Positions 1-21,583 of a stretch of 64,000 nt of DNA are shown here, one piece after another. The stretch's first letter is position 1. Each line of letters begins with the position of its first letter. The notes beneath the pieces are model-generated. The model did not search any database. It was not told the origin of the DNA and was given only the letters and a program-made list of their open reading frames with translations. The stretch comes from Octopus bimaculoides. Taxonomy: Eukaryota. A program made the position numbers and the translations under genes. The stretch is taken from positions 115,600,632 through 115,664,631 of the forward strand of contig NC_068983.1 of NCBI RefSeq assembly GCF_001194135.2, given 5' to 3'.

Positions 1-1527
1 CAAATTTGTATTTACAATCAGTTCCTTTCCATTGATGGTTAGGCACTTCCAGAAACTAACTGGTACAGTGTTATTATTAGATTTCTTGATATATTCATTC
101 AACTGAATTTGAAGCCAACGAAGAGAACAATTACACACCAGTTTATTATTGTTGAGGTCTATATTGAAATATTCCTTTTCTGGCCAGGTGAAATTATTAA
201 AAACACATTCATCCACAACTTGGAGCTGGTTGTTACTGAGTTTAATAGACTCTAAAGTGTTTTGTAGACCTTGAAATGCACCTTCCTCTAAAGTCTCTAT
301 TTTGTTGTCATTTAGCTTTATGACTTTTAGCTTTGAGTTCTTTTCAAATGCAAATGCAGCAATTACTGCTAGATTACATTTGGAAAGATCCAAGATTTCT
401 AAATGTGGTAATGTTTGAATTGCTGTCCAAAGATCTTTATTATTAAAACTATTGCCTTTTAATGATAACTTTTTCAATGTTCCACTGGTATTTTCTAACC
501 ATTTTATTTCCATAGTTCCTTTTAGATTTTGATTATCCAAATATAAAATTTCTAAGAGAGGCACTTCAGTCATTGTGGTGGCTTCAATGATCAATTGATT
601 TCTATTTAAAAATAGTTCTCTAAGATTATTTAAACCATTTAAATATGTTTTTCGCAATTTGGTAAGTTGGTTATTTCTCACAGACAAGGTGTTTAGTGTA
701 TTCATATTTTGAAATATGTCACCTGATAGACTTTTAATTCTATTGTTATCTAACTTGAGGGTTTCAAGTTTTGAAAGGTTTTTAAAATGTTTCAGATGAT
801 CATGTGTGATTTTGTTTGAACTTAAGTCTAAATGTTGCAGCTTCTTTTTTACATTTTCTAAATTTCCCATTGTTATGTCTGTGATTGCATTATTACTCAC
901 ATCAAGATACTGTATGTTGAGCAGATGCTCGAAAGCTTCTGGATGTAGCATTTTTGCCAGCTTATTATTTTTTATAGTAAGATGAGTTAAATTCTGGAAA
1001 TGTGCAAATGTATTTATGTTGATATCACAAATTTTATTATTTATTAAAGAGAGTTTTGTCAATTTAGTTAGCTTGTTAGAAGTAAAATTGTTTAAATTTT
1101 GGTTCATATAGAAATTTTCAATTTCAAGAGTTTCAAGGTTGTACAGGTTTTGAAGGGCTGTAAAATCAACTAGTTCTGTTGTATCTGTTGTTGATAGCTC
1201 TAAGCTTTTCATGAAATCTTCTTGTCCACCAAATGCATTTTTGTCAATTACTGTTAATGGATTGTCATATATTGATAAGTGTTTAATTTGAGTACCATTG
1301 AAAACATTCTCCTGTAGAGAGTGTAGATTTGTTCTGGTAAGATATAACATATACGTGCCATTGAGCTGTTCAAAGTTTAAGCGTTTGTTATGTAAATCAA
1401 TGTATTCACAGATAATTTTGAAGTTATTGATATTACAAGCATGTTTGATGTTAATTATTTCATTGAGAGCTAAAGCAGCTACCTGGAATTGTAATATCCA
1501 AATTATATGCAGTTGGTTGAATTTCAT
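1..1527 (-). CDS. LRR receptor copy A: signal peptide, LRRNT, ~16 LRRs, LRRCT; 3'-partial (runs off left edge)
   Basis: Manual translation is stop-free from ATG at 1527-1525 to base 1 (509 codons): MKFNQLHIIWILQFQVAALA...ACNINNFKIIC...LxxLxLxxN repeats...NNKLVCNCSLRWLQ. Missing from the ORF track, probably because there is no in-window stop. Clear paralog of copy B. Confidence 0.92.
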   Translation of the reverse strand, partial: MKFNQLHIIWILQFQVAALALNEIINIKHACNINNFKIICEYIDLHNKRLNFEQLNGTYMLYLTRTNLHSLQENVFNGTQIKHLSIYDNPLTVIDKNAFGGQEDFMKSLELSTTDTTELVDFTALQNLYNLETLEIENFYMNQNLNNFTSNKLTKLTKLSLINNKICDININTFAHFQNLTHLTIKNNKLAKMLHPEAFEHLLNIQYLDVSNNAITDITMGNLENVKKKLQHLDLSSNKITHDHLKHFKNLSKLETLKLDNNRIKSLSGDIFQNMNTLNTLSVRNNQLTKLRKTYLNGLNNLRELFLNRNQLIIEATTMTEVPLLEILYLDNQNLKGTMEIKWLENTSGTLKKLSLKGNSFNNKDLWTAIQTLPHLEILDLSKCNLAVIAAFAFEKNSKLKVIKLNDNKIETLEEGAFQGLQNTLESIKLSNNQLQVVDECVFNNFTWPEKEYFNIDLNNNKLVCNCSLRWLQIQLNEYIKKSNNNTVPVSFWKCLTINGKELIVNTNL

Positions 1528-4500: not shown

Positions 4501-6730
4501 GTAAGCTGACATAAGAAACCATTGTCAGTTGTTACCAGTCAGTTTCATCAGAATGACAAGTGCTTAGGTGTCACAAATACCAACCTTTACCTGAAATATT
4601 TTTTGTTCATTGTTCATTGATTAAATAAAGTATATAATGAACATAGTAATAATAAATTTTCTCGAATCTTTGAGAACAAAGCCTTCCTGATGTTTACAAC
4701 GAATGATCGTAAATTTATTCATACTAATATAGTCAAAGGATACATTGTGATTTACATCACTAGTGTAACAGGGCACTCTGGGTGTAAAATGGAACATAAA
4801 AAAACAAAACTTTCATTAGTTATAAAGAAAATATGCTGAAAGCTGATCTGCTGGGTGAAACAAGATGTAGGGCAGATAAGTTGGTAGCAATTGGAGAGTT
4901 TGATATTATTTTAAAATTTTATTTTAAGAAGGGACAGTGCCCATAACCTAAACTGGGAAAGTTGATGTACTTGGTATTCATTTTGAATTTCCACAATTTG
5001 ATGTATGTACAGAAAATGAGCTGGGTGCTTCAAAGGGTTTATAGTTCAAGTAAAGGTTTGAGTGAAATGATTAGAATTGTGTTTTGTGGTGAGACACAGT
5101 AGGAATGATCAAAGAGAGGCAAATGTATCCAACTTTGTTGGGGCACATGTACAGATTGGTTATTTAAAGCAAGCAAAAACCATTTGTAGTTATGCAGAAG
5201 GGACCACTATTATGTTGGTTAGAGGATGTTTCTTAATGACAGTTTACTAATCAGCCAGATGGTTTTTTTTTGTGGGGGTATGGTCTAGAATATTTGAGTG
5301 TATTTAGCAGCTATACCATTCCAACCATGTGAGCTGGCCTGAAGCACATTTGTGGTCAGAACATTCCAGTCTGATCACAGTGTCTTTGTTTGTTTTTTCT
5401 TTTTTTTTTTGGTATTGTTTATATAAGAGTATATTATCTTTCTTGAATATTTAAAGATAGTAAGACAGGGAGCTGAGAAATTTGGCTGCTATTTCAAGCA
5501 GGACAAGCATTAGTGTAGAAACACCCTTGTTGGTTTGAGTCTATGTGTTTGACCTCTACACAATGTATGATATGTGATTATGTAAAATCTGCTGTTTTGT
5601 TTTGCTTTGTTTTCTTGCGAAGAGATTGGGGTTAGGCATGATTCACCTATTCCATGCTAGACTTAATATAATTTTTTGCAGGCTAGTGTTGTTTCTTTAT
5701 GTTCATCAAATGTGATGCCTAGGAATACTAAGTATGTTTGTGCATTGTCCTGCTTTCTGAACTATGTAGTTTACACGTGAATGTTGTCCAAGTATGGTAA
5801 GCAATTCCTGGTGTTTATATTTCTTTTTGTGTTATGTGAATATGTGTGAATGATCTTTGCTCTTAATGGTGAAAAGGAAGATGGGGAATTTAGTAAATGT
5901 TGTTATTAATCTATTGTAAGACATGAAGGAGTAGTTTGAAAGAGTCTGTTACTAATACAAGATGGTCCAAATAACCACATAGGGTATTCCTCACTGACTT
6001 GGCTCATTTCACTTTTAGTTAATTGAACTGGTGGCCATAAATGACAAGAATCATTGTCACTATTTAAACAAAGATTTCATCTTCTACTCTCATTTCTCTC
6101 TCAGAACGTGAGCTTTCTCCCCTAACCCCTTCTATTCCTTCAGTGATGATTAAAGCATCTTCAAAAGCAGCATTTGTCATTTATCGAGGATGTGTATTGC
6201 AAATGTTGCAGTGGATGTTGTGTGTCCAGGATAATTATTTTATGCTCTAAGTAACAAGACTTTCATTAATACACCCAGGTTGCAAGGAACAATTCCGGCA
6301 CTATTTAATGGACTGAATAAAGTTGTCATTATTTACTGTGTGGTATATACCATAACTGTAAATATATAACTGTCCAAGTGTCCTCTTAATCATTATTATC
6401 ATCATAATCTTTTTGTAAAGTTCTATGTTGGCATCAGTTAAATGAGTCCTTATGGTAGACATAATTTTATGAATGACTTTAGGAACTTTTTTTTATTATT
6501 AGCATTACAATTTCCTGTCAGGCTGCTTCTAATTCTTTCATCATATATACACTATTTGTAACTTCTATTAGCACTTTACTGTTTCATCCAATACATCTCT
6601 GTATCTAAGCTCGAAAATCAACACAATACAATGTTTTCATTTTTAATGGAAAGTCTACATATAAACATGGACAGTCAAATAGAAATTTTAATATATAAAG
6701 ACTATTATATGCAGTTCTATATCTGGGTTT

Positions 6731-8360
6731 CCTGCACTGATGCTGTTTTTCTGGTAAGACAGCTGCAGGAGAAATACCTAGCCAAAGATAGATCTCTGTA
6801 CCTGGCTTTCGTTGACATGGAGAAAGCCTTTGACAGGGTCTCCCGATCCCTTATCTGGTGGTCAATGAGGAAACTAGGGATAGATGAATGGTTAGTGAGA
6901 GCTGTGCGAGCCATGTACAGGGACACTGTCAGTAAGGTGAGGGTTGGCAACGAGTACAGTGAAGAATTCCGGGTAGAGGTAGGGGTCCACCAAGGTTCAG
7001 TCTTAAGCCCCCTTTTATTTATCATAGTCCTCCAGGCAATAACAGAGGAATTCNNNNNNNNNNNNNNNNNNNNNNNNNNNNNNNNNNNNNNNNNNNNNNN
7101 NNNNNNNNNNNNNNNNNNNNNNNNNNNNNNNNNNNNNNNNNNNNNNNNNNNNNNNNNNNNNNNNNNNNNNNNNNNNNNNNNNNNNNNNNNNNNNNNNNNN
7201 NNNNNNNNNNNNNNNNNNNNNNNNNNNNNNNNNNNNNNNNNNNNNNNNNNNNNNNNNNNNNNNNNNNNNNNNNNNNNNNNNNNNNNNNNNNNNNNNNNNN
7301 NNNNNNNNNNNNNNNNNNNNNNNNNNNNNNNNNNNNNNNNNNNNNNNNNNNNNNNNNNNNNNNNNNNNNNNNNNNNNNNNNNNNNNNNNNNNNNNNNNNN
7401 NNNNNNNNNNNNNNNNNNNNNNNNNNNNNNNNNNNNNNNNNNNNNNNNNNNNNNNNNNNNNNNNNNNNNNNNNNNNNNNNNNNNNNNNNNNNNNNNNNNN
7501 NNNNNNNNNNNNNNNNNNNNNNNNNNNNNNNNNNNNNNNNNNNNNNNNNNNNNNNNNNNNNNNNNNNNNNNNNNNNNNNNNNNNNNNNNNNNNNNNNNNN
7601 NNNNNNNNNNNNNNNTTGAGGGAACCTGTGAAAGAGGTAGACCCAGGAAGACCTGGGATGAGGTGGTGAAGCATGACCTTCGAACATTAGGCCTCACTGA
7701 GGCAATGACTAGTGACCGAGACCTTTGGAAATGTGCTGTGTGTGAGAAGACCTGGCAAGCCAAGTGAGACCATAAACCATGGCCTATGTCAGGGGTGTAT
7801 GTCAGCCCACTTATGTGTACCTTTCCTTCATTGGACACTAAACTCTGCTTGCGAAGACCTGTTGAGGCAAGTGAAATCGAAATCGAATCAAATTCGATGA
7901 CTGGCACCCATGCCAGTGGAGCGCTAAGAGCACCATCCGAGCGTGATCATTGCTAGAGTAACTGTCTGGCTTCCTCACCAGTGGCGCATAAAAAGCACCA
8001 TTTGAGCATGATTGTTACCAGCGTTGCCCTACTGGCACGTAAAAAAACATTCGAGCGAGGTCGTTGCCAGTGCCGCTAGACTGGCTCTTGTGCAGGTGGC
8101 ATGTAAAAAACACCATTTGAGCATGGCTGTTGCCAGTACTGCCTGACTGGCCCTCGTGCCGGTGGCATGTAAAAGCACCCACTANNNNNNNNNNACTGGC
8201 CCTCGTGCCGGTGGCATGTAAAAGCACCCACTACACTCTTGGAGTGGTTGGCGTTAGGAAGGGCATCCAGCTGTAGAAACTCAGCTAGATCAGACTGTAG
8301 CCTAGTGCCGCCATCAAATTGTTCAACACATGCTAACATGGATAGTGGACATTAAACGAC
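6731..8360 (+). mobile_element. RTE-clade LINE, 5'-truncated (RT domain, gap, C-terminus, tandem-repeat 3' UTR)
   Basis: LAFVDMEKAFDRV...GVHQGSVLSPLLF and RGRPRKTWDEVVKHDL...DRDLW; the 3' UTR has ~55-nt tandem units and the ggacattaaacga tail shared with many fragments in the window. Confidence 0.9.
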
Positions 8361-10929: not shown

Positions 10930-11720
10930 TTAGGATTATATGGACAATATTTTATGTAGGACCTGGGCAGTTCCTATGAGCACTATTTTTTGAATTTCTG
11001 CTATTTTGGGGTTTCCTATGTAAGAATCAGCCCCTTTTGCTATCATTCCTAGGGCACCTATGACAACAGGTATTGTTTTAGTCTTGAGGTTCCACATTTT
11101 GCTGATTTCTATTTCAAGATCTTTATACTTGCTCAGTTTTTGGTTGGTCATGACAGATACATTTATGTCGGTTGGGACAGTCATGTCAATGTGGAGGCAT
11201 GATTATTGTCTGAAGCCCTTTAATATAATGTCTAGCCTATTCGCATCTATCTTTCTGTCAGTTTGAGCGGTGAAGTTACAGAGGAGTGAGATGTCATTTT
11301 CAAGCACTGAAGGTGGTTTGTGTTCTCACCAGATTTTATCATGGAGCAGGCCCAAGTTTTTGCACATTACCCAGGGAATATACTGTGCTACTCTATCATA
11401 CCTGTTGTCATACTCTGTAGGTGCAAGAAGACTACACATGGAGACAACATGATTGAATGTTTCATTTTGTTGTTTACATACATGACTTTAGGCTATTGCT
11501 GTTCTTTAATATGTCAGCCTGGTAGTTCCTTGTAGGTAGGCATTGATCTTGAGCTGCTATGATAAACCCTTCTAATTCTGATTTTAAGCCAGAATACTCC
11601 AACCATTGATGGGTAAGGGCTTTGTCAACATTAGCATTATTAGCTCTCTTTGGGTATTTGCTAAGGCAGCAGTTTTAGCATGGGTTTTCATATGCTTAAC
11701 TTTTTCTGTGCTTGTTCCCA
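10930..11720 (-). mobile_element. R4/Dong-like non-LTR retrotransposon 3' fragment (RLE domain), degenerate
   Basis: HDRVAQYI...NRLDII...IDMTVPTD...KLSKYKDLEIEISKMW...IPVVIGALG; flanked by (AAT)n tracts. Confidence 0.8.
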
Positions 11721-11776
11721 TTATTATTATTATTATCATTATCATTATTATCATTATCATTATTATCATTATCATT

Positions 11777-11841
<65 letters not shown>

Positions 11842-11858
11842 TATTATTATTATTATTA
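11721..11858. repeat. Compound (ATT/ATC)n microsatellite
   Basis: Directly visible; source of the poly-I/N/L pseudo-ORFs. Confidence 0.95.
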
Positions 11859-13453: not shown

Positions 13454-15906
13454 TTATATATCACTTTCTCTCAGTTCGAGTGTGGTATAAATAATTACAT
13501 TTTTATTGTTTAAAATGTTACCATTTTCATTCTGTGGAAGACATGGTAAAGGTCTTTGTGCATGATTCAAATGTGATCCCCTTTGTGCAGGTATATTATT
13601 TATAGGTAATGATTGGTCTTGGAAAGTACTTTTCTTACCACCATTCCTTATATTTTCTTTATTGTCTAATGCTTTATCTTGCACAGTTTGAGGGTTCTGA
13701 ATTTCTTCATAGTTTTCACCTAGTATAAAGCTAGGGTTATCCAAATATTGATAGCTTCCTGCAGAAAGCTGTTGATCTGGCTGAAGTTGACCATGAGATA
13801 TTACAGAAACGGTTGGCTCTTTAGTTTCATTTGGTTTTTTTCTTAAATAACGTTTAGTTTTTGGTGTTAAATTGACTTGTGTCCTTGCTGAATTTGTAGG
13901 TTCTTCATATATGTGTTTCTTATTGTTTTTATGTCTTCTGTATAATACATAGCATAAAATAAGAAGGATTAAAAGTGCAACAAATACACCAATTCCAAGT
14001 CCTATCTCTAATGTATTTTTGTTGCTAGTNNNNNNNNNNNNNNNNNNNNNNNNNNNNNNNNNNNNNNNNNNNNNNNNNNNNNNNNNNNNNNNNNNNNNNN
14101 NNNNNNNNNNNNNNNNNNNNNNNNNNNNNNNNNNNNNNNNNNNNNNNNNNNNNNNNNNNNNNNNNNNNNNNNNNNNNNNNNNNNNNNNNNNNNNNNNNNN
14201 NNNNNNNNNNNNNNNNNNNNNNNNNNNNNNNNNNNNNNNNNNNNNNNNNNNNNNNNNNNNNNNNNNNNNNNNNNNNNNNNNNNNNNNNNNNNNNNNNNNN
14301 NNNNNNNNNNNNNNNNNNNNNNNNNNNNNNNNNNNNNNNNNNNNNNNNNNNNTTTCAAGTAATTAACAGATGAAATGATATCATTAGATTTCTTAATAAA
14401 CTCTTGCACCTGAACTTGAAGCCAATGAAGAGAACAATTACACACCAGTTTGTTATTGTTGAGGTCTATATTGAAATATTCCTTTTCTGGCCAGGTGAAA
14501 TTATTAAAAACACATTCATCCACAACTTGGAGCTGGTTGTTACTGAGTTTAATAGACTCTAAAGTGTTTTGTAGACCTTGAAATGCACCTTCCTCTAAAG
14601 TCTCTAGTTTGTTGTCATTTAGCTTTATGACTTTTAGCTTTGAGTTCTGTTCAAATGCAAATGCAGGGATTACTGCTAGATTACATTTGGAAAGATCCAA
14701 GATTTCTAAATGTGATAATGTTTTAATTGCTGTCCAAAGATCTTTATTATTAAAACTATTGCCTTTTAATGATAACGTTTTCAATGTTCCACTGGTATTT
14801 TCTAACCATTTTATTTCCATAGTTCCTTTTAGATTTTGATTATCCAAATATAAAATTTCTAAGAGAGGCACTTCAGTCATTGTGGTGGCTTCAATGATCA
14901 ATTGATTTTCCTTTAGAGATAGTTCTTTAAGATTACTTAAACCATTTAAATGTGTTTTTTGCAATTTAGTAAGTTGATTATTTCTCACAGATAAGGTTTT
15001 CAGTTTATTCATATTTTGAAAAATGTCACCTGATAGACTTTTTATTTTGTTGTAATTGAAGTTGAGGGTTTCAAGTTTTGAAAGGTTTTTAAAATGTTTC
15101 AAATGATCTTCTGTGATTGTGTTTAAACTTAAGTCTAAATGTCGAAGGCTGTTCTCAATATTTTGAAATGCAAATTCATCAACTTTTGAGATAGAGTTTT
15201 CTATTAAATACAAATTTTCCAGTTTTCTGTTTTCTTGCAAATTTCCCATACTTATTTCTTTGATAGCATTTTCAGTCATGTCAAGATGTTGTAAGTTGGG
15301 TAAATATTTGAAGGTTTGTGGAAGTGGTATTTTATCCAAGTTATTTTTTGTAATGTGAAGTTGAGTTAAATTCCCCAAATGTACAAAAGCTTTTGTGCTG
15401 AAGTATTGAATTTTATTATTTATTAAAGAGAGTTTTGTCAATTTAGTTAGCTTGTTAGAAGTAAAATTGTTTAAATTTTGGTTCATATAAAAATGTTCAA
15501 TTTCAAGAGTTTCAAGATTATACAGGTTTTGAAGGGCTGTAAAATCAACTAGTTCTGTTGTATTTGTTGTTGATAGCTCTAAGCTTTTCAAGAAATCTTC
15601 TTGTCCACCAAATGCATTTTTGTCAATTACTGTTAATGGATTGTCATATATTGATAAGTGTTTAATTTGAGTACCATTGAAAACATTCTCCTGTAAAGAG
15701 TGTAGATTTGTTCTGGTAAGATATAACATATATGTGCCATTGAGCTGTTCAAAGTTTAAGCGTTTATTATTTAAATCAAAGTTTTTGCAGATAATTTTGA
15801 AGTCATAAATACTACAAGCGTGTTTGATGTTAATTGTTTCATTGAAAGCTAAAGCAGCTACCTGGAATTGTAATATCCAAATTATATGCAGTTGGTTGAA
15901 TTTCAT
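13454..15906 (-). CDS. LRR receptor copy B: type I membrane protein (signal peptide, LRRNT, ~17 LRRs, LRRCT, gap, TM, 161-aa tail)
   Basis: ORF 15927/15906 to the gap at 14030-14352 gives the ectodomain. After the gap, the frame starting at 14029 reads TSNKNTLEIGLGIGVFVALLILLILCYVLYRRHKNNKKHIYEEP...GSYQYLDNPSFILGENYEEIQ...QRPLPCLPQ...VIIYTTLELRESDI* and joins ORF-track 13454-13744 without a stop. The in-frame upstream ATG at 15927 is an alternative start. Confidence 0.88.
13940..14005 (-). other. Transmembrane helix of LRR copy B
   Basis: IGLGIGVFVALLILLILCYVLY followed by basic RRHK stop-transfer residues. Confidence 0.85.
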
Positions 15907-15934
15907 TTTGGAATGCGTAATTTCCATGTGTCAC

Positions 15935-18594: not shown

Positions 18595-19179
18595 NNNNNN
18601 NNNNNNNNNNNNNNNNNNNNNNNNNNNNNNNNNNNNNNNNNNNNNNNNNNNNNNNNNNNNNNNNNNNNNNNNNNNNNNNNNNNNNNNNNNNNNNNNNNNN
18701 NNNNNNNNNNNNNNNNNNNNNNNNNNNNNNNNNNNNNNNNNNNNNNNNNNNNNNNNNNNNNNNNNNNNNNNNNNNNNNNNNNNNNNNNNNNNNNNNNNNN
18801 NNNNNNNNNNNNNNNNNNNNNNNNNNNNNNNNNNNNNNNNNNNNNNNNNNNNNNNNNNNNNNNNNNNNNNNNNNNNNNNNNNNNNNNNNNNNNNNNNNNN
18901 NNNNNNNNNNNNNNNNNNNNNNNNNNNNNNNNNNNNNNNNNNNNNNNNNNNNNNNNNNNNNNNNNNNNNNNNNNNNNNNNNNNNNNNNNNNNNNNNNNNN
19001 NNNNNNNNNNNNNNNNNNNNNNNNNNNNNNNNNNNNNNNNNNNNNNNNNNNNNNNNNNNNNNNNNNNNNNNNNNNNNNNNNNNNNNNNNNNNNNNNNNNN
19101 NNNNNNNNNNNNNNNNNNNNNNNNNNNNNNNNNNNNNNNNNNNNNNNNNNNNNNNNNNTATATATATATATATATATAT

Positions 19180-21218: not shown

Positions 21219-21403
21219 GTAGTTGAAATGGAACTTTTCTTAGTTGTTTTTATGAAGATTTCTAGTTTAGGTGTTGAACTTGCAGTTGAAATGGAACTTT
21301 TCTTTCTCGATTATTTTCTTGGAAGTCTCTTGTTTAGGTATTGAACTTGTAGCTGAAATGGAACTTTTCTCAGTTTTTTTCATGGCAATCTCTTGTTCAG
21401 TTT
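21219..21403 (-). repeat. Three imperfect ~60-bp tandem repeats encoding Ser/Thr/Lys-rich units
   Basis: Unit aaagttccatttca(g/a)ct... repeated three times; translates as EKSSISATSSIPKQETSKK-like. Confidence 0.75.
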
Positions 21404-21583
21404 GAGAATATACATTGCCAATAGTTAATAATTCATCTTTGCAGCAGTAACACTTATATATACAATGATACTCACCACCTATAGGGACAACAATTTTAAC
21501 ATGTTTGAATGATAGTAGGTTAAAGCAAGACCAACTGATGTAACATGTCTGTTACCAAATGATCACTGAAACCTTCTTTCCAG

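What the first reader, a model, noticed from the sequence alone, without database searches (positions are those of the whole stretch)
601..1029. Hypervariable central LRR block between near-identical flanks in paralogs A and B
Hand alignment: A 121-600 versus B 14428-14907 differs at 8 of 480 nt (6 non-synonymous, 2 synonymous), and LRR1-4 are also nearly identical. Right after ...NNKI the proteins switch to 25 of 57 identical residues (CDININTFAHFQNLTHLTIKNNKLAK versus QYFSTKAFVHLGNLTQLHITKNNLDK). Such sharp boundaries point to gene conversion or unequal crossover homogenising the flanks while a central cassette of different ancestry is kept or swapped, the pattern expected of a diversifying ligand-binding surface (inference).
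Basis: partly seen in the sequence, partly recalled or inferred. Interest (0 to 1): 0.78.

Follow-up and report, generated by a model that had tools for sequence, protein, structure and literature searches.

The report
Gene-conversion mosaic in octopus LRR receptor paralogs
Two neighbouring octopus genes for leucine-rich-repeat membrane receptors keep parts of their coding sequence almost identical by copying from each other, while a three-to-four-repeat block and the cytoplasmic tail stay anciently different; this is a clean but ordinary case of concerted evolution.

Summary
The window is Octopus bimaculoides. Paralogs A and B, plus a truncated copy C, are single-exon LRR / TM genes lying antisense in an ATG2 intron.

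The orthologues of both genes in O. sinensis settle the cause. In A-cds 142-498 and 928-1407, informative sites group the copies by species (13:0 and 15:0). In the blocks between and beyond, they group by orthology (48:0, 15:0, 12:0, 120:1). Synonymous divergence between A and B is 0.01-0.07 in the near-identical tracts, about 0.10-0.14 between orthologues, and 0.7-1.1 in the cassette and tail. The breakpoints (498/499, 926/927) are the same in both species, and the non-coding flanks of A and B are unrelated.

This is recurrent interlocus gene conversion between ancient tandem paralogs, not assembly collapse or uneven constraint. The block is not hypervariable: each cassette type is conserved between species (6-7% nt, omega 0.4-0.5). 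Only LRR9-12 shows paralog differences concentrated on the concave face. The closest analogue is mammalian TLR1/TLR6. The genes lack a TIR domain, so they are not TLRs, and nothing resembles a VLR cassette system.

The parts
1..1527 (-). Paralog A, first 509 codons (ATG at 1527). The gene runs off the left edge of the window. The full 848-aa product is P0001: signal peptide, LRRNT, 17 LRRs, LRRCT, Ser/Thr stalk, beta-sandwich, TM, tail.
1030..1386 (-). A, LRR1-4 (cds 142-498): conversion tract, 2.2% different from B, dS 0.07. In O. sinensis the same tract differs at 1 nt.
   Evidence: species-grouping sites 13:0:0
835..1029 (-). A-type cassette, second half of LRR5 to LRR7 (cds 499-693): 32% nt diverged from B, dS 0.71. 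Orthologous to the O. sinensis A cassette (6.7% different).
   Evidence: orthology-grouping sites 48:0
601..834 (-). A, LRR9-12 by B numbering (cds 694-927): intermediate block, 12% diverged, dS 0.22. Differences predate the species split and are concentrated on the concave face.
121..600 (-). A, LRR13-17 (cds 928-1407): conversion tract, 8/480 differences, dS 0.02.
   Evidence: species-grouping sites 15:0:0
46..120 (-). A, LRRCT start (cds 1408-1482): unconverted, 25% diverged from B.
   Evidence: orthology-grouping 12:0
1387..1467 (-). A, LRRNT patch (cds 61-141): 16% diverged from B. It lies between the identical signal-peptide block (1468-1527) and LRR1-4.
13454..15927 (-). Paralog B (old model P0003; orthologue of O. 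sinensis XP_029634312.1, 919 aa). ATG at 15927 (MEITHSK...) or 15906 (MKFNQ...). Interrupted by the N gap at 14030-14352. Stop codon at 13454-13456.
15409..15765 (-). B, LRR1-4: conversion tract, partner of window 1030-1386.
15142..15408 (-). B-type cassette, LRR5-8, including one extra 24-residue LRR (72 nt) that is absent from A and from Argonauta but present in the distant homologue P0126.
14908..15141 (-). B, LRR9-12: intermediate block, partner of window 601-834.
14428..14907 (-). B, LRR13-17: conversion tract, partner of window 121-600.
13865..14029 (-). B, TM and juxtamembrane block: 2/165 differences from A in O. bimaculoides (recent conversion), but 10% between A and B in O. sinensis.
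13457..13864 (-). B, cytoplasmic tail: unconverted, 21-52% nt diverged from A, dS about 1.0-1.2. Orthologous to the O. sinensis B tail.
   Evidence: orthology-grouping 120:1
24034..24375 (-). Copy C: a 5'-truncated fragment (homology starts at about cds 177). LRR1-4 is 98.7% identical to A, then 25 nt of B-type cassette, then the N gap. It is a third mosaic that shares the 498/499 junction.
21303..21434 (-). Decayed relic of a B-type Ser/Thr stalk (57% aa identity to B_sin 568-611). It is conserved at the orthologous place in O. sinensis and may be the rest of an old third copy.

Best explanation
A and B are ancient tandem paralogs, same strand, ATGs about 14 kb apart. They encode a type I membrane receptor with 17 or 18 leucine-rich repeats.

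Recurrent interlocus (ectopic, non-reciprocal) gene conversion keeps four coding tracts nearly identical within each species:
- the signal peptide,
- LRR1-4,
- LRR13-17,
- in O. bimaculoides, the TM segment.

Conversion stops at the same two nucleotides in O. bimaculoides and O. sinensis. Several regions are never overwritten and keep their old, paralog-specific sequence:
- LRR5-8, where B has one extra repeat,
- LRR9-12, last homogenised before the species split,
- the LRRCT and stalk,
- the cytoplasmic tail.

Shown here: the mosaic, its statistical significance, within-species homogenisation, orthology of the unconverted blocks, and conservation of each cassette type.

Inferred: the boundary is held by two effects together. 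One is selection against hybrids that lose paralog-specific ligand binding (LRR5-12) and signalling (tail). The other is the mechanical barrier that 30% divergence and a 72-nt indel pose to heteroduplex extension. In this reading the converted parts are a shared scaffold that must co-evolve.
For: - Four-gene site patterns, species-grouping: orthology-grouping: other, by A-cds block:
  - 142-498: 13:0:0
  - 928-1407: 15:0:0
  - 1981-2145: 6:0:0
  - 499-693: 0:48:1
  - 694-927: 0:15:2
  - 1408-1482: 0:12:0
  - 2146-2544: 1:120:0
- dS between A and B is 0.07 and 0.02 in O. bimaculoides and 0.013 and 0.011 in O. sinensis in the tracts. Between orthologues it is 0.10-0.14. In the cassette it is 0.71-1.12 and in the tail about 1.0-1.1.
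- The O. sinensis breakpoints are the same: last flank difference at 489, first cassette difference at 499; last at 926, next at 945.
- Permutation tests give p about 2e-4. The unconstrained best block is window 835-1029.
- A and B share no homology upstream of -8 or downstream. Each flank is collinear at 86-92% with its O. sinensis orthologue.
- The cassettes are conserved between species with omega 0.38-0.49.
- Copy C is a third mosaic with the same junction. Sites 246, 343, 387 and 390 show reticulation among A, B and C.
- A separately produced assembly of another species, O. sinensis GCA_006345805.1, shows the same pattern.
Against: - Only two species and one individual per species were available. 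There are no population data, so ongoing conversion and tract lengths are inferred.
- The direction of transfer cannot be determined. A_bim-A_sin and B_bim-B_sin distances are equally flat, 4.4-5.3%.
- Short-read assembly in O. bimaculoides and any read-based polishing in O. sinensis could exaggerate identity inside the tracts.
- No GC3 rise is seen in the tracts, so there is no biased-conversion footprint.
- Whether selection or mere sequence divergence holds the boundary is untested.
- B is interrupted by an N gap, so LRRCT to the proximal domain of B_bim is unseen.
Confidence: 0.88

Rival explanations
1. Assembly artefact: the near-identical tracts are collapsed, chimeric or gap-filled sequence, and the true copies are more diverged.
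For: The O. bimaculoides assembly is gap-rich. B is broken by a gap at 14030-14352, and C ends 25 nt into the cassette at a gap. Identical runs of 131-154 nt could confuse a short-read assembler.
Against: The same mosaic with the same breakpoints occurs in the separately produced O. sinensis assembly. There are 28 sites where both copies of one species share a state that differs from both copies of the other species. This cannot come from collapse of diverged copies. Residual differences inside the tracts include ancestral (Argonauta-like) states in B. Each copy is contiguous with its own unique flank, which is orthologous between species.
Confidence: 0.03
2. There is no exchange. Uniformly old paralogs simply differ in constraint: the flanks are under strong purifying selection and the centre is relaxed or positively selected.
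For: LRR scaffolds are constrained, and concave-face positions vary more in all comparisons.
Against: Synonymous divergence differs 10- to 50-fold between blocks (0.02 versus 0.71-1.1). The flanks evolve at the normal rate between species (dS 0.10-0.13) yet are nearly identical within species. Site patterns switch from species grouping to orthology grouping.
Confidence: 0.02
3. B (or A) is a recent duplicate whose central cassette and tail were replaced from a third, diverged donor. The event would be a cassette swap, exon shuffling or unequal crossover, rather than homogenisation of the flanks.
For: Copy C combines an A-like flank with a B-type cassette, so junction-sharing recombinants exist.
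Against: Both A and B exist at orthologous positions in O. sinensis with orthologous cassettes, tails and non-coding flanks. Both genes and both cassette types therefore predate the species split, whereas the flank identity postdates it. A and B non-coding flanks are unrelated. No other donor lies within about 95 kb of O. bimaculoides and O. sinensis sequence examined.
Confidence: 0.04
4. A VLR-like or chicken-Ig-like diversification system: germline or somatic copying of LRR cassettes into a receptor gene to generate a repertoire.
For: Sharp junctions fall inside an LRR. A truncated copy C could serve as a donor.
Against: A and B are complete open reading frames. Only one fragment, not an array, is present. 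The cassettes are stable between species. There are two discrete cassette types, not a repertoire.
Confidence: 0.02

Closest known systems
Gene conversion between mammalian TLR1 and TLR6 (Kruithof et al. 2007, PMC2077338; see also PMC3125219)
   Same: Both are tandem LRR-receptor paralogs. In a defined region the paralogs within a species are more alike than orthologues between species. This results from independent conversion in each species with almost identical boundaries. The other LRRs stay diverged, and conversion limits divergence of a shared part.
   Different: Here two separate ectodomain tracts (LRR1-4 and LRR13-17) flank the unconverted LRR5-12. The cytoplasmic tail is the most diverged part, whereas in TLR1/6 the TIR domain is converted. 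There is no TIR domain at all. Only two species were compared.
Sequence exchange in clustered plant LRR resistance genes (NLR and receptor-like protein clusters; e.g. RPP8, PMC6771003; general knowledge for Cf-4/Cf-9)
   Same: Both show mosaic paralogs in tandem arrays, with differences between paralogs enriched on xxLxLxx solvent-exposed positions (seen here only in LRR9-12).
   Different: This is a two-gene cluster with two stable, conserved cassette types. It is not a polymorphic, rapidly reshuffled family, and there is no evidence of omega above 1 over a block.
Lamprey/hagfish variable lymphocyte receptors (established knowledge)
   Same: Both involve an LRR receptor with constant ends, a variable middle, and junctions inside LRR units.
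   Different: The germline genes here are complete. There is no cassette array and only two fixed cassette types that are conserved between species. Somatic assembly is neither needed nor indicated.
LRR + membrane-proximal beta-sandwich + TM adhesion/receptor proteins (TRIL, FLRT, ELFN, LINGO, LRIG classes)
   Same: The domain order is the same: LRRNT-LRR-LRRCT, stalk, beta-sandwich, single TM, unstructured tail.
   Different: Identity is only 25-28%, confined to the LRRs. No Pfam domain is detected in the C-terminal half. Close relatives were found only in Octopus and Argonauta, plus one 36%-identical protein of unknown source.

Membership tests
Toll-like receptor (NCBI names: 'toll-like receptor 4' for O. 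sinensis B and the Argonauta gene) | Extracellular LRR domain with LRRNT/LRRCT caps | tested here: met
   Pfam LRR_8/LRR_4/LRR_1 hits. AF2 solenoid with pLDDT 80-95. Foldseek hits TLR3, LGR and LRIG ectodomains.
Toll-like receptor (NCBI names: 'toll-like receptor 4' for O. sinensis B and the Argonauta gene) | Single transmembrane helix | tested here: met
   Hydrophobic segment LEIGLGIGVFVALLILLILCYVLY, modelled as helix 671-695.
Toll-like receptor (NCBI names: 'toll-like receptor 4' for O. sinensis B and the Argonauta gene) | Cytoplasmic TIR domain (definition as in PMC8609888) | tested here: not met
   hmmscan of the C-terminal 390 aa at E<=10 finds no TIR. No PF01582 or PF13676 in the precomputed lists for P0001-P0004, and only LRR families are listed for the B_sin gene P0271 in its locus. 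The tail is predicted disordered.
Interlocus gene conversion / concerted evolution of paralogs | Within the tract, paralogs of one species are closer to each other than to their orthologues | tested here: met
   Species-grouping sites 13:0 and 15:0. A-B distance 0.3-2.2% versus 4.4-5.3% between orthologues.
Interlocus gene conversion / concerted evolution of paralogs | Outside the tract, orthology is recovered (phylogenetic incongruence along the gene) | tested here: met
   Orthology-grouping sites 48:0, 15:0, 12:0 and 120:1. Non-coding flanks are orthologous between species and unrelated between paralogs.
Interlocus gene conversion / concerted evolution of paralogs | The drop in divergence affects synonymous sites and is statistically significant | tested here: met
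   dS 0.01-0.07 versus 0.7-1.1. Fisher p=2e-9 at synonymous sites. Run-length permutation p about 2e-4.
Interlocus gene conversion / concerted evolution of paralogs | Shared polymorphism between paralogs, or direct observation of converted alleles in a population | not testable with these tools
   No population or read-level data are available.
VLR-type somatic LRR cassette assembly | Incomplete germline receptor gene lacking the variable LRRs | tested here: not met
   A is an uninterrupted 848-codon ORF and B_sin a 919-codon ORF.
VLR-type somatic LRR cassette assembly | Arrays of partial LRR donor cassettes flanking the gene | tested here: not met
   Sensitive blastn and tblastn of both cassettes against the window and L001-L004 find only A, B and the single fragment C.
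VLR-type somatic LRR cassette assembly | Somatic rearrangement in immune cells | not testable with these tools
   This needs tissue or single-cell sequencing.
IGFALS (NCBI name of the O. sinensis A model) | Orthology to the vertebrate secreted acid-labile subunit (no TM) | tested here: not met
   The match to IGFALS covers generic LRR stretches only (best 7wrq_A, E=5e-37). The 455-aa model ends at a 1-nt frameshift, and the frame continues to a TM and tail.

The most novel reading that the evidence does not exclude
The identical conversion boundaries in two species may be held by selection. In that reading A and B form a functional pair: a shared scaffold, possibly a common partner or heterodimer interface in LRR1-4 and LRR13-17; a paralog-specific recognition module (LRR5-12, 17 versus 18 repeats); and a paralog-specific signalling tail. 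This would define a TIR-less, cephalopod-lineage receptor system organised like TLR1/TLR6. The truncated copy C would be an extra conversion partner that can move flank and cassette combinations in the germline.
Probability: 0.15. Interest if true: 0.55.

Novelty: new member of a known kind. Interest (0 to 1): 0.33.

Why it matters
The locus is a compact, well-resolved example of conversion-limited divergence in an invertebrate LRR receptor pair. The same breakpoints are used in two species, and the 'constant' and 'specific' parts are cleanly separated.

For cephalopod biology it flags an uncharacterised receptor family. Close relatives were found only in Octopus and Argonauta. The family is mislabelled TLR4 or IGFALS in databases, and it is nested antisense in ATG2.

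It also gives a direct hypothesis about which repeats carry paralog-specific function: LRR5-12, with concave-face differences in LRR9-12.

It does not reveal a new mechanism.

Tried and rejected
- I searched the protein database with an ATG2 exon to reach the O. sinensis locus through the host gene. It returned only an unrelated 98-aa metagenome protein. The B orthologue was found instead through the 90% cluster of P0003.
- P0003 itself is not on record as a called gene.
- I tried to root the duplication with Argonauta and the distant homologue P0126. There were too few informative residues (cassette 1:2:1). Whether the duplication predates the Octopus-Argonauta split stays open. A and Argonauta both lack LRR8, which B and P0126 have, and this hints that it does.
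- I first inferred that A was the donor, from the flat A_bim-A_sin distance. I withdrew this when the B_bim-B_sin distance proved equally flat.
- GC3 as a footprint of biased conversion showed no signal.
- Concave-face enrichment in the LRR5-8 cassette is absent (7/15 versus 30/59).
- Pfam on the C-terminal half gave nothing meaningful.
- Sequence and fold searches against PDB returned only generic LRR ectodomains.
- A paper search for the run accessions of P0126 found nothing, so its source organism is unknown.
- No paper describing this locus appeared in two literature searches.
Full report
**What the window is**

The window is AT-rich eukaryotic DNA with N gaps. The 509 codons read from window 1527 down to 1 are 100% identical to P0001, an 848-aa protein. 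P0001 is encoded on Octopus bimaculoides chromosome record CM046603.1 of GCA_001194135.2.

- Paralog B is window 15927/15906 down to 14353, then an N gap, then 14029 down to 13457. It matches the older O. bimaculoides model A0A0L8HK46 (P0003).
- A third, partial copy C lies at 24034-24375.
- All three are on the minus strand and are single-exon.
- They lie antisense inside an intron of ATG2. The same nesting is seen for the homologues in O. sinensis and Argonauta hians.

**Check of the observation**

- Window 121-600 versus 14428-14907 differs at 8 of 480 nt: 6 non-synonymous and 2 synonymous.
- The 57 residues after ...NNKI are 25/57 identical.
- LRR1-4 differ at 8 of 357 nt.

A-cds position p equals window 1528-p, so the reported span 601-1029 is A-cds 499-927. 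The list of A/B differences shows both edges to the base. There are none from 418 to 498, then 499, 500, 501, 502... The last is at 926 and the next at 1058.

The contrast is not chance.

- Fisher p=1e-28 for all sites and 2e-9 for synonymous sites.
- Permutation of concordant runs over variable sites gives p about 2e-4 for the two longest runs.

**Anatomy of the mosaic**

The block is composite, and the mosaic is wider than reported. Differences between A and B, by A-cds block:

| A-cds block | Region | A versus B |
|---|---|---|
| 1-60 | signal peptide | 0 differences |
| 61-141 | LRRNT | 16% |
| 142-498 | LRR1-4 | 2.2% |
| 499-693 | LRR5-8 cassette | 32%, plus a 72-nt insertion in B that adds one LRR |
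| 694-927 | LRR9-12 | 12% |
| 928-1407 | LRR13-17 | 1.7% |
| 1408-1482 | LRRCT start | 25% |
| (gap in B) | | unseen |
| 1981-2145 | TM / juxtamembrane | 1.2% |
| 2146-2271 | proximal tail | 21% |
| 2272-2544 | distal tail | about 52% |

An unconstrained two-breakpoint scan picks window 835-1029 as the most deviant block. Homology between A and B begins 8 nt before the ATG and is confined to the coding sequence. The surrounding DNA is unrelated.

The picture is therefore islands of near identity in an otherwise old paralog pair. It is not a variable island in a young pair.

**The decisive comparison**

- The O. sinensis orthologue of A (P0002, locus L002) is A-type throughout. It carries a single 1-nt deletion that truncates the annotated model.
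- The orthologue of B was not listed in the homology search. It turned up as a member of P0003's 90% cluster: XP_029634312.1, 919 aa (P0271).
- B_sin lies 19.6 kb upstream of A_sin on the same strand, again inside ATG2.

I built a codon alignment of A_bim, B_bim, A_sin, B_sin and Argonauta. Four-taxon site patterns switch cleanly along the gene.

| A-cds block | Species-grouping | Orthology-grouping | Other |
|---|---|---|---|
| 142-498 | 13 | 0 | 0 |
| 928-1407 | 15 | 0 | 0 |
| 1981-2145 | 6 | 0 | 0 |
| 499-693 | 0 | 48 | 1 |
| 694-927 | 0 | 15 | 2 |
| 1408-1482 | 0 | 12 | 0 |
| 2146-2544 | 1 | 120 | 0 |

Here species-grouping means A_bim=B_bim and A_sin=B_sin, with the two species differing. 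Orthology-grouping means A_bim=A_sin and B_bim=B_sin, with the two gene types differing.

- In O. sinensis the two tracts differ at 1 of 357 nt and 4 of 480 nt.
- The O. sinensis breakpoints are the same as in O. bimaculoides.
- Synonymous divergence between A and B is 0.01-0.07 in the tracts. Between orthologues it is 0.10-0.14. It is 0.15-0.22 in LRR9-12, 0.71-1.12 in the cassette and about 1.0-1.1 in the distal tail. The Octopus-Argonauta value is about 1.0.
- Non-coding flanks of A and of B are each collinear with their O. sinensis counterparts at 86-92% identity. A and B flanks are unrelated to each other.

**Interpretation**

The duplication is ancient. By dS it is of the order of the Octopus-Argonauta divergence. 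Defined parts of the coding sequence have been homogenised by interlocus gene conversion, independently and recently in both species.

- LRR9-12 (and probably 61-141) was last homogenised before the species split.
- LRR5-8, the LRRCT and stalk, and the tail have escaped homogenisation.
- Uneven purifying selection cannot explain a 10- to 50-fold contrast at synonymous sites, nor the species-grouping sites.
- Assembly collapse cannot explain the same mosaic in a separately produced assembly of another species, nor 28 sites where both copies changed together.
- A recent duplication with a swapped cassette is excluded, because both genes and both cassette types sit at orthologous positions in both species.
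- Unequal crossing-over is unlikely as the homogeniser. The identical segments are internal patches and the intergenic DNA is not shared.
- The direction of transfer cannot be determined. I first inferred A as donor and withdrew that when the B-B distance proved as flat as the A-A distance.
- There is no GC3 footprint of biased conversion.

**Is the block hypervariable or diversifying?**

For LRR5-8 the answer is no.

- Each cassette type is conserved between species: 6.7% nt difference for A and 6.0% for B, with omega 0.38-0.49. This is about the same as the flanks.
- A-versus-B omega in the cassette is 0.3-0.5.
- Differences are not enriched on the concave xxLxLxx positions (7/15 versus 30/59).

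The block is old, not fast. LRR9-12 is different.

- Paralog differences there fall on concave positions 10/20 times, against 8/75 elsewhere (p=3e-4).
- The O. sinensis pair shows the same (9/20 versus 9/75, p=0.002).
- Concave dN is 0.27-0.29, against a block dS of 0.14-0.22.

This is suggestive of selection for different binding surfaces. It rests on few sites. Concave positions are also the more variable class in the A-Argonauta comparison, so it is not proof.

**Copy C and other relics**

- C starts at about cds 177 with unrelated sequence upstream, so it lacks a start codon and signal peptide.
- It is 98.7% identical to A over LRR1-4.
- It continues with 25 nt identical to the B-type cassette before the assembly gap.
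- At cds 246 it keeps the ancestral G that A and B have both lost. It therefore cannot be a mix of A and B reads.
- Sites 343, 387 and 390 show every pairing of A, B and C, which means repeated exchange.
- The orthologous interval in O. sinensis lacks C.
- A decayed piece of a B-type stalk lies between B and C in both species.
- No further cassette fragments exist in the window or in L001-L004. That, together with complete ORFs and stable cassettes, excludes a VLR-like system on present evidence.

**What the genes encode**

| Feature | Position in A | Evidence |
|---|---|---|
| Signal peptide, cysteine-capped LRRNT | N-terminus | |
| 17 LRRs (A) or 18 LRRs (B) | ectodomain | |
| LRRCT | after the LRRs | |
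| Ser/Thr-rich stalk, longer in B | 515-557 | |
| Seven-strand beta-sandwich | 564-650 | |
| TM helix | 671-695 | |
| Cytoplasmic tail, about 150 aa, predicted disordered | C-terminus | |

- SYQYL and RPLP motifs in the tail are conserved in all family members.
- There is no TIR domain. The database names 'toll-like receptor 4' and 'IGFALS' are similarity labels, not family membership.
- Sequence and fold searches return generic LRR ectodomains: IGFALS, LRRC15, LRIG1, TLR3, LGR4/5 and LINGO-1.
- Close relatives exist only in Octopus and Argonauta. One 36%-identical, colinear protein (P0126) comes from Logan assemblies of unidentified runs (contigs of about 3-6 kb). It has the extra LRR like B, so the 18-LRR form is probably ancestral.

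**Comparison with what is known**

The pattern matches mammalian TLR1/TLR6. There, a defined region is more similar between paralogs than between orthologues, because of independent conversions with nearly the same limits in each species, while other LRRs diverge (PMC2077338). It differs in three ways:

- which parts are converted (two ectodomain tracts and the TM, not the cytoplasmic domain);
- the protein family;
- the phylum.

Mosaic exchange among clustered plant LRR genes is a further parallel. I found no paper describing this octopus locus.

**Verdict**

The gene-conversion interpretation is correct and now rests on a two-species test. The 'hypervariable/diversifying' and 'swapped' parts are not supported, apart from a suggestive concave-face signal in LRR9-12.

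This is a new example of a well-known process in an uncharacterised cephalopod receptor pair. It is useful as an annotation and as a pointer to the functionally specific repeats, but it is not mechanistically novel.

Noticed in passing
whole window; L001 14837-15067, 16385-16667, 19759-19893: The LRR genes are nested antisense inside an intron of ATG2. The arrangement is conserved in O. bimaculoides, O. sinensis and Argonauta hians. Conserved ATG2 exons lie just left of the window.
   Followed up: partly
window 24034-24375 (-): Truncated third copy C: an A-like LRR1-4 joined to a B-type cassette start, ending at an N gap. It carries an ancestral base at cds 246 that both A and B have lost. It is absent from the orthologous interval of O. 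sinensis (L004 2452-3367).
   Followed up: yes
window 21303-21434 (-); L004 3841-3978: Decayed relic of a B-type Ser/Thr-rich stalk (57-63% aa identity), conserved in both species. It overlaps a 67-nt tandem repeat at 21221-21384. It may be the remainder of an old third copy.
   Followed up: partly
L002 about 11355 (O. sinensis A orthologue): A 1-nt deletion (GGAATA to GGATA) truncates the annotated protein to 455 aa ('IGFALS'). The frame continues intact to the TM and tail. This is either an assembly error or incipient pseudogenisation. Between species the A tail has omega 1.07, and the TM/juxtamembrane block has 14 non-synonymous changes to 1 synonymous.
   Followed up: partly
window 14030-14352: The 323-N gap in B understates the missing sequence. 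By the O. sinensis orthologue it should hold about 204 codons, including a Ser/Thr stalk that is longer than in A by a 36-column insertion in the alignment, and the membrane-proximal beta-sandwich.
   Followed up: partly
window 6631-7767 (+): An ORF with what looks by eye like a reverse-transcriptase motif pattern (not searched against any family library), probably a retroelement, interrupted by the N gap at 7054-7615.
   Followed up: no
window 18595-19158, 35008-35841, 36537-36900, 11720-11858: Assembly gaps are bordered by (TA)n or (GA)n microsatellites. An (ATT)n array of about 140 nt lies between A and B.
   Followed up: no
L005-L008 (Logan contigs ERR3431203, SRR21372856, SRR30931884, SRR21372858): An 871-aa colinear homologue (P0126, 36% identity) on contigs of about 3-6 kb from unidentified samples. 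It has the extra LRR and B-like tail motifs, which suggests the B architecture is ancestral.
   Followed up: partly
P0001 residues 749-755 and 815-821 (left of window); B window about 13460-13800: Cytoplasmic motifs S..SYQY and RPLP..P are invariant across the five family proteins aligned, despite an otherwise fast-evolving, disordered tail. They are candidate signalling or sorting motifs.
   Followed up: no
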